From the IMG/VR virus record IMGVR_UViG_3300046167_000825, positions 124,001-188,000 of that record: 64,000 nucleotides of DNA; one strand, 5' to 3'. Numbering within the stretch: position 1 is the first letter of the stretch; every line of letters begins with the position of its first letter. Under the pieces are notes generated by a model that was not told the DNA's origin, ran no database searches, and saw only the letters and a list, made by a program, of their open reading frames with translations. The position numbers and the translations under genes were made by a program. This document shows positions 31,283 through 38,740 of the stretch, one piece after another.

Positions 31283-31906
31283 ATGAAAAATGAAATAGAA
31301 ATGTTCCAGCAAGCCCAAGCGAACCCCGTGATTCGTGAGCGATTCCTAATGAAGAAGCAAAAACTCGTGAAGACGATTTGTTTCCGATATTGTGGGCGTG
31401 CTGATGAAGACCTCCTCCAAGAAGGGAACATTGGGCTGATGATTGCCTTCGATAAGTATGATCCAGAAATCGGGAAGTTTGATACTTACGCTCGGCAATG
31501 GATATTCGCTTACATGCAGCAGTTCAACTGGAAGAAGCCCGTAGTTCGTATGGGGAAACGAATCCGAAATAAGAGATTACAGACTGGAGGGGAAACCCGC
31601 CTCCCGATTATTTCGCTGACTTACAGTGAGGAAGGAGTCAACATCGAGATTCCCTCTGGGGATTTACACATCTTAGATGTGTTGCAGCAGCGGGAAGCCT
31701 CCCAGTTACTTCAAGAATCTTTGAAGAACATCAAGAAAGACCGCACGAGAGAAATGATTGTTGCCTATTATGGTCTGGGGGAAGAAGACAATGTCAACAT
31801 GAATGTCCTTTCCGAGAGATACTCCGTATCGAAGCAACGCTGCCAGCAAATCATCTCGGAAGAAATCAAAAAGATGGCGAAAGAGAACCCCCAACTAGAT
31901 TCTTGA
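31283..31906 (+). CDS. Phage-encoded RNA polymerase sigma70-family factor
   Basis: Region 2 EDLLQEGNIGLMIAFDKYDPE.GKFDTYARQWI; region 4 YYGLG...LSERYSVSKQRCQQI. Confidence 0.88.
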   Translation: MKNEIEMFQQAQANPVIRERFLMKKQKLVKTICFRYCGRADEDLLQEGNIGLMIAFDKYDPEIGKFDTYARQWIFAYMQQFNWKKPVVRMGKRIRNKRLQTGGETRLPIISLTYSEEGVNIEIPSGDLHILDVLQQREASQLLQESLKNIKKDRTREMIVAYYGLGEEDNVNMNVLSERYSVSKQRCQQIISEEIKKMAKENPQLDS

Positions 31907-31917
31907 TTGTTCGAGGC

Positions 31918-31962
31918 AAAAAAAAAGAACCCCGCCAGACCGAATTGTCTGACGGGGTTCTT
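31918..31962 (-). terminator. Intrinsic terminator
   Basis: AAGAACCCCGTCAGAC/GTCTGGCGGGGTTCTT stem followed by a U-tract on the minus strand. Confidence 0.8.
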
Positions 31963-32005
31963 AGCAATCAATCATCATTAGGAGTAATGATTCGTTAAAA
32001 GGGGT

Positions 32006-32180
32006 AGGTCTTTATTTATACTCGCATCTACATTCGAGTTGAAAGGGAGCGACTGATTCTGTTTCGGACTTCAAATAGGTGTCCACTGACGATGAGAGTT
32101 AACCTCTCGTGATAGGATGTTTTCGCTAGAGGCAAGCCTCCCTACTCAATCGCATCACCAGTCGCAAATCGCCAAGACCT
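32006..32180 (-). ncRNA. Candidate multibranched structured RNA, family not recognised
   Basis: Nested stems AGGUCUU/AAGACCU, GCGACUG/CAGUCGC, GUGAU/AUCAC, GAGG-CUUG-CCUC, GAGAG/CUCUC, GGAC/GUCC, ACUCG/CGAGU; no ORF in the track. Confidence 0.55.
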
Positions 32181-32187
32181 TAACAGA

Positions 32188-32772
32188 CTATACCGCTGTG
32201 ATTGACCAATCGCCTCCAGCAGCGAGTCGATATTGAACCCATTGACCAACGGGAATCAACTTGCGAGCCACTTTCTTTGCTTCAGTGAAAGCATTACGAG
32301 GCTTGCTCTTTGGTACAGAACCATTGGCATCCTCTTCAAGTACTTCGTATTCTCTACGGACACCAGAGAGATGGATGTCACCCACTTTGGCATCGTCAGA
32401 TCCGTTGTAGACCTTGACACCAGCGATGGCGTTCCCATCAACTTCGTAAGCCTCATAATGGCTCTGAGAAGTGTGTTCCCCACGCAAGGTCTTGCCGAGA
32501 CTTTCATAGACCTCAGTAATGGCGTTGCGAGCAGTTGTTTCGTCACAGTCGTGAGTTGTGCAACCAGCCATAACCTTCTCTATCATGCCGTCAGCACTGA
32601 GTGCGTTCATGCTATCCATCACGAGGGTTTCATAAGAAACACCAATCTGGATGGTGGCAGCCACTCGGTGACGACCTAACCATTTCCTATCAGATCCTCT
32701 ACCTCGTTGAGCCCCTTTGAGGGTGGTTTCGATTTTGATTTCACAGTAGGGTGTGATTTGAGCAATTTTCAT
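32188..32772 (-). CDS. Hypothetical protein
   Basis: Start refined to MKIAQ behind GGAGG; own promoter motif. Confidence 0.7.
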   Translation of the reverse strand: MKIAQITPYCEIKIETTLKGAQRGRGSDRKWLGRHRVAATIQIGVSYETLVMDSMNALSADGMIEKVMAGCTTHDCDETTARNAITEVYESLGKTLRGEHTSQSHYEAYEVDGNAIAGVKVYNGSDDAKVGDIHLSGVRREYEVLEEDANGSVPKSKPRNAFTEAKKVARKLIPVGQWVQYRLAAGGDWSITAV

Positions 32773-32814
32773 TGTGACCTCCAAGTCTAGTAGTTGATTG
32801 TTGCTTACAAGTAC

Positions 32815-32845
32815 TATACGGATCTTCCGTAAAAATGCAACCGCA
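32815..32845 (-). promoter_or_regulatory. Class-I phage promoter motif
   Basis: TGCGGTTG-N16-CCGTATA. Confidence 0.8.
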
Positions 32846-32846
32846 C

Positions 32847-33020
32847 TCACTTCGGGAGAAATATCCGAGCCATTCTTTCTGGGATAACAACGGTGTGGTT
32901 ACAAGTGTCGCAGCACCTCCCGTCAAAGACGGGGAGGGCATTGTGACCCCAGTAAATGGGATCGATTTTCGAGGTGGGGTGGGGAGGGCGAAGTTTCGCC
33001 CCGCAGATACAACATTTCAT
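32847..33020 (-). CDS. Small zinc-finger protein
   Basis: CCICG...GHNALPV.DGRCCDTCN..VVIPER phage motif. Confidence 0.65.
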   Translation of the reverse strand: MKCCICGAKLRPPHPTSKIDPIYWGHNALPVFDGRCCDTCNHTVVIPERMARIFLPK

Positions 33021-33443: not shown

Positions 33444-33893
33444 TCAAGGTTTTTTTATTCCTCGAACTGCCACGATGTGTCCTTTCTCATTGCGAACTGG
33501 ATTATCGCTTGGAGATGTGCAAGGGACAAACACATCGACACGGTCTCGAAGATGGCTTCCAGCCATACCACTGACCAACAGCACCATGTCATCCCTCTCT
33601 GGGATATCAGAGAGGGGGCAAATCACTTCTTTGGTGACGTTGTCGATGAGGACAACTTCACCAACGGTGTCTCTGTCGAACATCTCGATCCAGTCACCGA
33701 TAGTCCCCACTGCACCACCAGAACTTGTAGATACACGGACTTGGTATCCAGAAGCCTCCAGTAACACGGTTTCACTGTCATCCCCTTTGTGTGGGAGGAT
33801 GACCGTGATTGCATGTGGTGTCAGATTTACTACCGTCACGCCATTAGCGACAGAGGTTTTGGGGAAGGCGTTGGTTGGATAAAAAGTAGTCAT
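33444..33893 (-). CDS. Viral NLTPH-motif hypothetical protein
   Basis: VVNLTPH...LVS...VRNEKGHIVAV motif; AAGGAG SD. Confidence 0.7.
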   Translation of the reverse strand: MTTFYPTNAFPKTSVANGVTVVNLTPHAITVILPHKGDDSETVLLEASGYQVRVSTSSGGAVGTIGDWIEMFDRDTVGEVVLIDNVTKEVICPLSDIPERDDMVLLVSGMAGSHLRDRVDVFVPCTSPSDNPVRNEKGHIVAVRGIKKP

Positions 33894-34990: not shown

Positions 34991-35428
34991 CTACCGTATT
35001 CGGCAGACAGCGAGAACTTTGAGGGCAGCGACTGGAGTGTCAGACCAAACGACACAGCCATCGGGGTCAACCAGTTCGATGAGGTCACCGTTGGAACGAA
35101 CTTCCCCGATTTCTCTGGGGAACGACCCAACGGGCTTCTGGATTTGATAGCCCTTATCTATCTTCTGGTTGAACACTTTGAATGGGCGTGTTGTGCCGAA
35201 GCCTTTCGTTTGACCCCTTGTGCCAACCTTCCCCCATCGTCTACCAATGCTCCCATCTATACGAGTTTCGATTCTCCAGAACTTGTGAGAACCGTCTGTG
35301 GTGTTCTTCAGAACTACATACGGGAAGAAGCCCTTGTTGCATAGTTGTTTGAACTTTATGTATCCACCCACTTGAATGGGTTGCCCATGAAGTTCGTGTT
35401 TGTGCCAGGCTGAAAGATTTACTTGCAT
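34991..35428 (-). CDS. WGR-domain protein
   Basis: SHKFWRI...RRWGKVGTRGQ...K..KGY. Confidence 0.8.
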   Translation of the reverse strand: MQVNLSAWHKHELHGQPIQVGGYIKFKQLCNKGFFPYVVLKNTTDGSHKFWRIETRIDGSIGRRWGKVGTRGQTKGFGTTRPFKVFNQKIDKGYQIQKPVGSFPREIGEVRSNGDLIELVDPDGCVVWSDTPVAALKVLAVCRIR

Positions 35429-37483: not shown

Positions 37484-38740
37484 TTACGAGAGGTCAACCA
37501 ACTCACCGTCACCGATGTGGCTTGTGTTGCCTTGATCCACGACACCACCACGAATGAAGGTATCCACCAACATATCCAGTTGAGCGTGCATTGAAGCATC
37601 GACTCCACCACGAACTTGACGGAAGGAATCCTTGACAAGTGTCGTTGGGATCTTGCGACCTCTCTTGTGGTAGAAGACCACACGAGATTGCATGTGCTTC
37701 ATCCAACCACACAACTCACGGTGTCCGAACTCCATCTCAATGCTATCAGACTTGACAGCACCACGAATGGCTTTCACGACATCCCCGATGTTATCGAAGA
37801 AGTCACGCTCACCTTGTTTCATGCCCCCACAGAGCCTTGCCAACAGAGGGAACTTCGCCTTGACGATGTTGCTCTCATCTTTCCAGTCGAGGGTTGTAAA
37901 CTCCCATTTTGAGTCAAAGCGACTGAGGATTGAAGCATCCATCACTTGTGCCGAAGAATAGCGACTAGAACCGTTCCCAATGCTATTCGCAGTGGCAACG
38001 ATACGAGTACCCTCCAGAACGGGCAGAGTGCTACCATCTGGATGTTGGATACGCTTAGAAACACTGTCCAACATAAGACGAAGATGCTCGCCTTGTTGTG
38101 GGTCACAACGGTCAACATCTGTCAGAACGACAAGGTATGGAACTCGTCTGCCACTAGTGGGAGATACATAGCCCTCTGTCAGAGCCTTCGCCAAAGCACC
38201 CATTTTGTAAATCGTTCCCTCGTTCGGGTCGATCTCGTGGGAGAACAACACCTTGCTGATATCCACATCGGGATTGATTTGGATTGACATACAAGGAGTG
38301 CGAGTAACCCAAGAGTAGTTCAGCCAGAAAGCATCCTTACCCGTTCCAGCAGCACCGTAGATGAGTTGAGTTGCACCACTCTCGATATCCAAGCAAATGT
38401 CGAACACGACTTTCTTGGCATTGCCATAAGAGGGCAGTTTGTAATGTGATGGACGGACACCGTTAGCACCACAAACACCGACCTCTACATCAAGGTTGAT
38501 TTCCATATCGAAGTCGTGAAACATTGCTCTCAAGTCTTGTGGGGCGACTGGTTGAGTTCTTCTCTTTCTGCGAGCAGAAACAGCATCCATAGCCTCTTGC
38601 GAAACAATAGGGCTATTGGGGTGAGCCTCAGCATAGGCTTCAAGGCTCATTGAGTGTGCCTCTTGAATGTGATTGACAAGTGAGTGGGCTTCAAACCCAC
38701 AGATAGCACAAATCGGTAAAGCAGTAGATAAAGTAGTCAT
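37484..38740 (-). CDS. MoxR/CobS-like AAA+ ATPase with an N-terminal C2H2 zinc finger
   Basis: CAICG...HIQEAH; Walker A GAAGTGKD; Walker B-like VVLTDVDR; IVATANS.G; D.S.LSRF. Confidence 0.82.
   Translation of the reverse strand: MTTLSTALPICAICGFEAHSLVNHIQEAHSMSLEAYAEAHPNSPIVSQEAMDAVSARRKRRTQPVAPQDLRAMFHDFDMEINLDVEVGVCGANGVRPSHYKLPSYGNAKKVVFDICLDIESGATQLIYGAAGTGKDAFWLNYSWVTRTPCMSIQINPDVDISKVLFSHEIDPNEGTIYKMGALAKALTEGYVSPTSGRRVPYLVVLTDVDRCDPQQGEHLRLMLDSVSKRIQHPDGSTLPVLEGTRIVATANSIGNGSSRYSSAQVMDASILSRFDSKWEFTTLDWKDESNIVKAKFPLLARLCGGMKQGERDFFDNIGDVVKAIRGAVKSDSIEMEFGHRELCGWMKHMQSRVVFYHKRGRKIPTTLVKDSFRQVRGGVDASMHAQLDMLVDTFIRGGVVDQGNTSHIGDGELVDLS

What the first reader, a model, noticed from the sequence alone, without database searches (positions are those of the whole stretch)
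32006..32180. ~175-nt multibranched candidate ncRNA between a stop codon and its terminator
Seen on the minus strand: outer stem AGGUCUU/AAGACCU and inner stem GCGACUG/CAGUCGC. The inner stem encloses a junction of GUGAU/AUCAC (holding a G-CUUG-C tetraloop hairpin), GAGAG/CUCUC and GGAC/GUCC followed by GAAAC. There is also a side hairpin ACUCG/CGAGU. G-U pairs and the CUUG loop favour the minus strand. There is no ORF here in an otherwise dense genome, and I cannot match it to tRNA, tmRNA, RNase P, 6S, SRP or hammerhead. Inference: a possibly undescribed structured RNA (ribozyme, protein decoy/antitoxin mimic or processing element) co-transcribed with the 32188..32772 gene.
Basis: partly seen in the sequence, partly recalled or inferred. 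Interest (0 to 1): 0.7.

Follow-up and report, generated by a model that had tools for sequence, protein, structure and literature searches.

The report
Modular structured RNA in phage 3'UTR
The untranslated stretch after a gene of a marine giant phage holds two conserved folded RNA modules of no known family. They sit just upstream of a short tail that is complementary to the start regions of the phage's own early genes, so this is probably a new phage regulatory RNA, though its expression and function are untested.

Summary
The inner junction (P1 GCGACUG/CAGUCGC, P2, P4, a weaker P3) is kept with compensatory changes in all four sequence variants I could find. The outer stem AGGUCUU/AAGACCU occurs only in the window and competes with a better-supported structure. 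The "side hairpin" plus the A-rich linker and CUAC form an H-type pseudoknot that covaries in nine relatives.

The interval therefore holds two adjacent modules, not one closed multibranched RNA. There is no Rfam, tRNA or tmRNA match. Folding energy alone is weak (z -2.2 for the whole interval, -0.8 for the core).

The modules lie in the roughly 260-nt 3'UTR of a monocistronic unit of a 289-kb marine jumbo phage: its own promoter, a 194-aa ORF, then a strong terminator. Close relatives swap other modules into the same slot, including an ultraconserved M1 element, tRNA-like minihelices and an internal-promoter ncRNA. All keep an invariant tail: a hairpin with a CUCC loop, GAUUGAUUG, and the terminator. 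That tail is strongly complementary to the leaders of 19 genes driven by the phage's conserved promoter family.

Best reading: a 3'UTR-borne regulatory RNA whose structured body includes the flagged element. The element's own role is unknown, and no expression data exist.

The parts
32813..32850 (-). Promoter of the 194-aa gene (GTGCGGTTGCAT... with -35 TTGCAT 32835-32840 and -10 TATAGT 32813-32818). It is one of 19 copies of a conserved promoter family in the 289-kb genome.
   Evidence: the same family stands in front of the homologous gene in relatives
32773..32806 (-). 5' leader with the CAACAAUCAAC motif and the GGAGG Shine-Dalgarno sequence
32188..32772 (-). 194-aa ORF of unknown function. 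It has a confident predicted fold with no solved relative.
32170..32179 (-). GGUCUUGGCG, an invariant 5' segment of the type A module. UUGGCG could pair with CGUCAR of J3/4 as a pseudoknot; this is speculative.
   Evidence: 100% compatible, one U-A/U-G change, no compensatory change
32049..32165 (-). Type A junction domain. P1 is 32159-32165 with 32049-32055. P2 is 32149-32158 with 32109-32118, carrying a window-specific insertion hairpin at 32124-32147. P3 is 32094-32108. J3/4 AUCGUCAGU is 32085-32093. P4 is 32066-32084. J4/1 GAAACAGAAU is 32056-32065.
32004..32039 (-). H-type pseudoknot. S1 is ACUCG 32035-32039 with CGAGU 32020-32024. S2 is GUAG 32028-32031 with CUAC 32004-32007. The A-rich linker is 32008-32019.
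31974..31991 (-). Hairpin AUCAUUA-CUCC-UAAUGAU, which presents an anti-Shine-Dalgarno CUCC in its loop. It is kept in all relatives, with stem changes in L008 and L057.
31965..31973 (-). GAUUGAUUG, complementary to the CAAUCAAUC motif of the early leaders. It lies between the hairpin and the terminator.
31918..31962 (-). Intrinsic terminator: a 16-bp stem at 31925-31962 followed by a U tract. The U tract is present only for the minus-strand transcript.

Best explanation
The flagged interval is part of the roughly 260-nt structured 3'UTR of a monocistronic transcript of a marine jumbo phage. The transcript runs from a promoter at 32813-32840, through the ORF at 32772-32188, to the terminator at 31962-31925.

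The interval holds two independently folding RNA modules:
- a junction domain ('type A': P1, P2, a small P3, P4, with invariant junction strands);
- an H-type pseudoknot with an A-rich linker.

These are cassettes. Closely related phages place other structured modules in the same slot, namely M1, tRNA-like minihelices, and an ncRNA with its own promoter. All keep the same terminal tail: a hairpin with a CUCC loop, GAUUGAUUG, and the terminator.

Most likely mechanism (inferred): the 3' part of this transcript acts as a regulatory RNA, either as the full mRNA or after processing. Its tail would base-pair with the leaders (CAAUCAAUCA ... GGAG) of genes driven by the phage's own conserved promoter family, covering their ribosome-binding sites. 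Type A and the pseudoknot would form the structured body, which stabilises the RNA or recruits a protein.

Shown here: the structures and their covariation, the transcription-unit signals, the mosaic of modules, and the complementarity. Inferred: transcription, processing, pairing in vivo, and any specific role of type A.
For: Type A:
- Four variants keep P1, P2 and P4 with 13 pairs changed on both sides, 94.9% paired against 31-43% when slid.
- RNAalifold agrees for P1, P2 and P4.
- All four variants fold to the same junction as their MFE structure.
- The junction strands and the P4 loop flanks are invariant while the helices change.
- G-U pairs favour the minus strand.

Pseudoknot: nine variants, 96% paired against 26-47% when slid, and 4 pairs compensatory across both helices.

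Transcription unit: a promoter family of 19 copies, one of them in front of this gene, also found in relatives, plus a strong terminator.

Mosaic. The distribution of modules does not follow the protein tree.

In relatives, the downstream ncRNA starts with a copy of the same promoter.

Tail:
- Mean duplex energy with the 19 leaders is -18.8 kcal/mol, against -11.1 for 313 control 5' regions (Mann-Whitney p 2e-12).
- None of 600 random 35-nt genome windows reaches the observed value (mean -9.9, sd 2.1).
- The same holds in nine relatives, including L057 at -24.2.
Against: - No expression data. The only RNA run holds a 175-nt contig of a relative's coding region.
- Type A exists in only four variants, which amount to two lineages, so the covariation counts few independent events.
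- Its folding energy is not better than shuffles in the window (z -0.84).
- No target, partner or catalytic motif was found for type A. There is no significant complementarity elsewhere in the genome.
- The tail could be a relic of an inverted leader rather than a working antisense seed.
- In the MFE fold the seed is only about half unpaired.
- The host and its RNA chaperones are unknown.
Confidence: 0.4

Rival explanations
1. A cis-acting 3'UTR element of the 194-aa gene. Type A (or M1 in relatives) would bind the gene's own product or a nuclease and set the mRNA's stability or translation, with no role in trans.
For: Type A or M1 always directly follows the stop codon of this gene family, even in L057, where the protein is only 52% identical and the sigma-factor neighbour is gone. 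M1 is about 88% identical where the protein is 52% identical.
Against: More distant homologues of the protein (P0029, 36% identity) have no such RNA downstream. The protein has no recognisable RNA-binding family; Sm/Lsm-like structural matches at Z 4.4-4.8 are within noise. The complex prediction was not run by the tool.
Confidence: 0.2
2. Structure without a specific function. The region would be a recombination hotspot that accumulates stable hairpins, decayed tRNA-like genes and leader fragments. These would be tolerated because they shield a long untranslated RNA from Rho or exonucleases.
For: Extreme mosaicism and length variation of the spacer, 268 to 929 nt. tRNA-like pieces are not callable as tRNAs. 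Folding z-scores are weak.
Against: Unpaired junction strands are invariant while the helices covary. The pseudoknot covaries in both helices. M1 and the tail are conserved far better than the adjacent protein.
Confidence: 0.15
3. One reading: one multibranched ~175-nt RNA closed by AGGUCUU/AAGACCU, possibly a new self-cleaving ribozyme or processing element.
For: The outer stem is part of the MFE structure of the window sequence. Type A shows the pattern of conserved junction nucleotides with covarying helices that is typical of ribozymes and aptamers. Its position between the ORF and a putative sRNA would suit a processing role.
Against: The outer stem is absent in the other three type A variants and overlaps the covarying pseudoknot strand. 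There is no match to hammerhead, twister, twister-sister, hatchet, pistol, hairpin or HDV models, even at E<10.
Confidence: 0.1
4. A riboswitch-like sensor that controls termination at 31925-31962, and with it read-through antisense to the sigma-factor gene.
For: A junction aptamer-like fold and a preQ1-I-like pseudoknot architecture lie upstream of an intrinsic terminator.
Against: There is no downstream gene on that strand. Type A is about 80 nt from the terminator, with two other conserved elements in between. I saw no alternative antiterminator pairing. There is no Rfam riboswitch hit.
Confidence: 0.05
5. A DNA-level element such as an origin, a packaging site or a protein-binding site, rather than an RNA.
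For: Both strands fold about equally well, and the opposite strand folds better in L008.
Against: G-U pairs that would be A-C mismatches on the other strand occur in three variants. The element sits inside a promoter-to-terminator unit. It is single-copy with no repeats.
Confidence: 0.03

Closest known systems
3'UTR-derived, terminator-anchored bacterial sRNAs (e.g. CpxQ, SroC, DapZ) and the tRNA-trailer sRNA 3'ETS-leuZ (from my own knowledge, not tested here)
   Same: A regulatory segment sits at the very 3' end of an mRNA, directly upstream of an intrinsic terminator with a U tail, and is complementary to the translation-initiation regions of other mRNAs. In relatives it lies directly 3' of tRNA-like modules, as in a tRNA trailer.
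   Different: There is no evidence of processing, chaperone binding or regulation. The upstream part is a large, conserved, modular set of structured domains. The presumed targets are the phage's own promoter-class regulon.
C-rich-loop sRNAs that target Shine-Dalgarno sequences (e.g. RsaE/RoxS, RNAIII hairpins; own knowledge)
   Same: A hairpin loop presents CUCC, complementary to GGAG.
   Different: The Rfam RsaE model matches only at 20 bits against a gathering score of 79. It is not a member.
preQ1-I / SAM-II-type H-type pseudoknots with an A-rich third loop
   Same: A 5-bp stem, a 4-bp second stem formed by loop nucleotides with a downstream strand, and an A-rich linker able to lie in the minor groove.
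   Different: No match to the Rfam models. It lies in a 3'UTR, not in front of a ribosome-binding site. No ligand is implied.
Viral 3' tRNA-like structures with upstream pseudoknot domains, and the MALAT1 mascRNA arrangement (own knowledge)
   Same: Relatives combine a pseudoknot with tRNA-like acceptor/T-arm minihelices at an RNA 3' region.
   Different: The window itself has no tRNA-like module. These are DNA phages. Aminoacylation and RNase P processing are untested.
Large ornate phage-associated RNAs (GOLLD, ROOL)
   Same: Phage-borne, multi-domain, and close to tRNA-like sequences.
   Different: No Rfam match in the window or in relatives. The element is much smaller, and the mosaic of modules differs.

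Membership tests
tRNA | Cloverleaf with a 7-nt anticodon loop and a T-loop (GTTCRANYC) | tested here: not met
   ARAGORN finds none in the window. No T-loop lies in 32006-32180. P4 has an 11-nt loop, and 10 nt separate it from P1.
tmRNA | tRNA-like domain plus a tag reading frame | tested here: not met
   ARAGORN and Rfam are negative for the window. Only a relative's tRNA-like module gives a 14.5-bit sub-threshold match.
Known self-cleaving ribozyme classes (hammerhead, twister, twister-sister, hatchet, pistol, hairpin, HDV-like) | Match to the family's covariance model and conserved catalytic core | tested here: not met
   No hit on the element at gathering thresholds or at E<10 with relaxed filters. 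CGUCAGU...GAAAC does not fit the hammerhead CUGANGA...GAAA core (direct reading of the sequence).
Known self-cleaving ribozyme classes | Site-specific self-cleavage | not testable with these tools
   Needs in vitro transcription and a cleavage assay.
Riboswitch | Aptamer coupled to an expression platform that controls a downstream gene | tested here: not met
   The element lies downstream of its ORF, no gene follows on that strand, it is about 80 nt from the terminator, and there is no Rfam hit.
preQ1-I riboswitch (for the pseudoknot module) | H-type pseudoknot with an A-rich tail and the family's conserved nucleotides | tested here: not met
   The architecture is similar, but there is no match to the Rfam model at E<10.
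Terminator-anchored 3'UTR sRNA | Seed region next to an intrinsic terminator with a U tail | tested here: met
   GAUUGAUUG 31965-31973 and the CUCC hairpin 31974-31991 lie directly before the terminator 31925-31962.
Terminator-anchored 3'UTR sRNA | Complementarity to target translation-initiation regions beyond chance | tested here: met
   -18.8 against -11.1 kcal/mol, p 2e-12. 0 of 600 random windows reach the observed value. Relatives show the same.
Terminator-anchored 3'UTR sRNA | A stable RNA species that regulates its targets | not testable with these tools
   No informative RNA run exists.
Type III toxin-antitoxin RNA | Tandem direct RNA repeats next to an endoribonuclease toxin gene | tested here: not met
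   No tandem repeats. The neighbouring protein matches no defence or toxin model.

The most novel reading that the evidence does not exclude
Type A and the ultraconserved M1 element are two new classes of functional RNA domain: self-processing, or recruiting a host or phage factor. Placed right after the stop codon, they would release or arm a phage-encoded anti-leader RNA that shuts off translation of the phage's whole early-promoter regulon. This would be an RNA-based temporal switch in jumbo phages, built from exchangeable RNA cassettes that include tRNA mimics.
Probability: 0.12. Interest if true: 0.8.

Novelty: new variant of a known kind. Interest (0 to 1): 0.55.

Why it matters
Regulatory RNAs of uncultured marine jumbo phages are almost unknown. 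This locus offers several things that can be tested directly:
- a defined transcription unit;
- two covarying RNA folds with no known family;
- a set of interchangeable RNA cassettes, including tRNA mimics, among near-identical phages;
- a concrete hypothesis, namely anti-leader pairing with 19 same-promoter genes.

If the hypothesis holds, it would show how a giant phage times its early gene expression with RNA, and it would add new structured RNA classes. If it fails, the locus still documents an unusual hotspot of RNA-module exchange.

Tried and rejected
- **Rfam.** No hit at gathering thresholds on the window and on relatives, and none on the element at E<10.
- **ARAGORN.** Run on the window, six loci and the whole genome; it finds only one tRNA-Ala, far away.
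- **Phage database.** BLAST of 31900-32800 gave no match.
- **Pattern scans.**
  - My first pattern had one N too many and found nothing.
  - The corrected P4 pattern gave 36 loci. Only L034 and L036, which are copies of known variants, pass the covariance model.
  - The leader+P1 pattern gave 120 chance hits, none passing the model.
  - The pseudoknot and M1 patterns are absent from IMG/VR.
- **Second GGTCTTGGCG.** A second copy at genome position 269196 lies in coding sequence and is a chance 10-mer.
- **T4-type late promoter.** I considered reading TATAAATA in the pseudoknot linker as a late promoter and rejected it. Only 11 copies exist genome-wide with no consistent context, and L006 replaces it while keeping the pseudoknot.
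- **Promoter strand.** I first read the conserved TATACGG motif on the wrong strand. Its position relative to SD-ATG fixed the orientation.
- **Type A targets.** No significant antisense or similar sequence for type A exists elsewhere in the genome.
- **RNA-seq.** One oligo-dT run holds only a coding fragment from a relative.
- **Function of the 194-aa protein.** No Pfam, PHROG or PADLOC match, and no convincing structural relative in PDB, BFVD or AFDB. One AFDB cluster labelled TldD/PmbA (TM 0.6) and one uncharacterised phage protein are the only matches.
- **Protein-RNA complex prediction.** The tool did not fold it.
- **One script timed out** and was rerun at a smaller size.

Full report
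**Where the window lies.** The window is bases 124001-188000 of a 289-kb IMG/VR virus record, about 66% complete by CheckV. Near-identical DNA occurs in many seawater metagenomes, and relatives come from TARA and other marine assemblies. It is a marine jumbo phage with a single callable tRNA. The flagged interval lies between a 194-aa ORF (32188-32772, minus strand) and a convergent sigma-factor gene (31283-31906, plus strand; Sigma70_r2, phrog_351). A strong minus-strand intrinsic terminator sits at 31925-31962.

**Checking the observation.** The minimum-free-energy fold of the 175 nt reproduces the drawing, but the energy is only modestly better than shuffles: -52.4 kcal/mol, z -2.2. The plus strand gives z -1.6. 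The 136-nt core alone gives z -0.84. Rfam 15 has no hit at gathering thresholds. At E<10 only the terminator region attracts weak sRNA matches. ARAGORN finds nothing, no conserved ORF is present, and there are no tandem repeats. The element is single-copy in the genome.

**Homologous loci.** The 194-aa protein has 27 close cluster representatives at 77-100% identity and 81 distant ones. I fetched the DNA downstream of twelve of them. The spacer between this gene and the next one ranges from 268 to 929 nt and is a mosaic. The core of the flagged element, which I call type A, occurs in four distinct sequences:
- the window (identical in L036);
- L002 (identical in L003 and L034);
- L008;
- L058.

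A covariance model built from the window and L002 finds exactly these and nothing else. That search covered 126 further candidate loci pulled from IMG/VR and JGI by sequence patterns.

**Structure of type A.** In the model-guided alignment, P1 changes from GCGACUG/CAGUCGC to GCGACCAC/GUGGUCGC. P2 is replaced wholesale, with GUGAUGCGAU/AUCCUAUCAC becoming CCCUAUCG/CGAUAGGG. P4 (GGAC/GUCC) is invariant. P3 shrinks from 5 bp to about 3 bp.

Overall, 94.9% of cells pair, against 31-43% when the partners are slid, and 13 pairs carry changes on both sides. RNAalifold recovers P1, P2 and P4, but not P3. All four sequences give the same junction as their own MFE structure.

The unpaired segments GGUCUUGGCG, CGUCARU, the flanks of the P4 loop, and GAAAYA-AA are invariant. 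G-U pairs at three different P2 positions in three variants favour the minus strand. UUGGCG could pair with CGUCAR as a pseudoknot. This is fully compatible in all four variants, but only one one-sided change supports it.

There is a caveat. The four variants amount to two lineages, so few independent events underlie the counts.

**The outer stem and the side hairpin.** AGGUCUU/AAGACCU exists only in the window. L002 and L058 lack the 3' partner, and L008 has AAGAGCC. The side hairpin, by contrast, is found in nine distinct relatives together with the A-rich linker and a C-rich strand. Four loop nucleotides pair with that strand:
- GUAG/CUAC in the window;
- GUGG/CCAC in most relatives;
- UUGGGU/ACCCAA in L006;
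- GUGGU/GCCAC in L008.

The hairpin stem itself covaries (ACUCG/CGAGU, ACUUG/CAAGU, ACACG/CGUGU). Counts are 96% paired against 26-47% when slid, with 4 pairs compensatory across both helices. This H-type pseudoknot uses bases 32004-32007, which overlap the supposed outer-stem strand at 32006-32012. The interval therefore holds two adjacent modules, not one closed multibranched RNA.

**Context: a promoter family and a transcription unit.** While checking the GATTGATTG motif I found a roughly 60-nt motif present 19 times in the genome. Read in gene orientation it is TGCGGTTGCA (-35), then 16-17 nt, then CCGTATAnn (-10). A leader rich in CAAUCAA(UCA) follows, then GGAG and ATG. One copy stands in front of the 194-aa gene, with -35 at 32835-32840 and -10 at 32813-32818. 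The same family precedes the homologous gene and its neighbours in relatives. The gene plus its structured 3'UTR therefore form a promoter-to-terminator unit. This supports co-transcription and the strand assignment.

**What relatives carry in the same slot.** Directly after the stop codon there is either type A or a 94-nt element I call M1. M1 is about 88% identical between L004 and L057 although their proteins are only 52% identical, and its closing helix changes compensatorily from GGCACAGU/ACUGUGCC to GGAACAGA/UCUGUUCC.

Other modules follow in various combinations:
- the pseudoknot;
- one to three tRNA-like minihelices with canonical T-loops (GGUUCGAnUCC), acceptor-like stems and variable hairpins. 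ARAGORN does not call these, and they reach only 25 bits against tRNA-Sec and 14.5 bits against tmRNA;
- in M1-type loci, an internal copy of the promoter family that starts a separate ncRNA.

The distribution of modules does not follow the protein tree, which indicates exchange by recombination. A more distant homologue of the protein (36% identity) has no RNA downstream.

**The invariant tail.** All arrays end with the same three elements: a hairpin whose loop shows (A)CUCC, then (U)GAUUGAUUG, then the terminator. The hairpin stem differs in L008, L009 and L057 but is retained. This tail is the reverse complement of the leader consensus.

Evidence for the complementarity:
- Its mean duplex energy with the 19 leaders is -18.8 kcal/mol, against -11.1 for 313 other 5' regions (p 2e-12) and -8.2 for shuffled tails.
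- None of 600 random 35-nt genome windows reaches it (mean -9.9, sd 2.1).
- In nine relatives, each phage's tail pairs with its own leaders at -10 to -24 kcal/mol, against about -8 for shuffled leaders. The distant L057 has both UCGGAG leaders and a CUCCGA tail.

In the MFE fold of the whole 3'UTR the CUCC loop is about 80% unpaired and the seed about 50%.

**Interpretation.**

Shown here:
- two conserved, covarying RNA folds of no known family;
- their position inside a defined transcription unit;
- their cassette-like exchange among relatives;
- a conserved tail complementary to the phage's own leaders.

Inferred: the 3' region works as a regulatory RNA that pairs with those leaders and covers their ribosome-binding sites. 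This layout matches terminator-anchored 3'UTR sRNAs and tRNA-trailer sRNAs (my own knowledge). Type A and the pseudoknot would serve as its structured body, giving stability or recruiting a protein.

The specific role of type A remains unknown. I found no target, no catalytic motif and no partner. The upstream protein has a confident predicted fold (pLDDT 95) with no informative relative. No usable RNA-seq exists.

**Verdict.** The outer closure is wrong. The claim of an undescribed structured RNA co-transcribed with the gene holds. Ribozyme or decoy roles are open. I rate it as a new variant of a known kind (a phage or 3'UTR regulatory RNA with novel structured domains), of moderate interest.

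Noticed in passing
window 19144, 25827, 28064, 28157, 32815, 33932, 34950, 35465, 36312, 37315, 38783, 38960, 40485, 61908 (positions of TATACGG as listed), and 5 more elsewhere in the genome: A ~60-nt conserved promoter-plus-leader family with 19 copies: TGCGGTTGCA, 16-17 nt, CCGTATA, then a CAAUCAAUCA-type leader, SD and ATG. It probably defines one temporal class of genes, possibly read with the phage sigma factor encoded at 31283-31906. Relatives have it too; in L057 the upstream half is replaced by AAAGGATCGAAC.
   Followed up: partly
window 31965-31991 (minus strand): The tail of the 3'UTR (CUCC-loop hairpin plus GAUUGAUUG) is the reverse complement of the leader consensus of that promoter family. 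It is far more complementary to the 19 leaders than control regions or random windows are.
   Followed up: yes
L004:3107-3200, L009:673-766, L011:2107-2200, L057:2730-2823: M1 is a 94-nt element that replaces type A directly after the stop codon in most relatives. It is about 88% identical between phages whose adjacent protein is only 52% identical, has compensatory changes in its closing helix, and has no Rfam match.
   Followed up: partly
L004:3600-3760, L015:2570-2690, L002:2300-2380, L058:2215-2290, L009/L061 (several): tRNA-like minihelices with canonical T-loops (GGUUCGAnUCC), acceptor-like stems (up to 9/4 bp as in tRNA-Sec), discriminator A and variable hairpins in place of the anticodon arm. 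ARAGORN does not call them. Only weak tRNA-Sec (25 bits) and tmRNA (14.5 bits) matches appear.
   Followed up: partly
L004:3389-3430, L015:2392-2433, L061:2369-2410, L011:~2375-2416: In M1-type relatives an internal copy of the promoter family (GTGCGGTTGAG...CCGTAYA) starts a separate ncRNA. It consists of hairpins, the pseudoknot, tRNA-like modules and the tail, and ends at the shared terminator. It is preceded by another UGAUUGAUUGA.
   Followed up: partly
window 32188-32772 (minus strand): The 194-aa protein belongs to a family with 81 representatives at 50% clustering, including copies embedded in giant proteins of 1499-4168 aa. It has no Pfam, PHROG or PADLOC match. Its AlphaFold model is very confident (pLDDT 95) but has no convincing solved relative. 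Sm/Lsm- and WYL-like matches at Z 4.4-4.8 are within noise.
   Followed up: partly
window 31916-31962: The hairpin between the convergent genes has a U tract only on the minus strand. Transcription of the sigma-factor gene (plus strand) may therefore read through, antisense to the RNA array and the 194-aa gene.
   Followed up: no
window 37484-38740 and 34991-35428 (minus strand): A CobS/MoxR-like AAA_5 ATPase (phrog_249, 'porphyrin biosynthesis') and a WGR-domain protein lie in the same block of minus-strand genes. A WGR protein also lies near the homologous gene in L057.
   Followed up: no
window 33444-33893 (minus strand): This 149-aa protein matches PADLOC model PDLC01138 ('unknown small protein, sometimes fused to CARF', E 1.7e-8) and two PHROGs of unknown function.
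   Followed up: no
genome G000:C1:268830-268904: This is the only tRNA gene (tRNA-Ala, TGC) found in the 289-kb record, which is unusual for a jumbo phage whose relatives carry several tRNA-like RNA modules.
   Followed up: no
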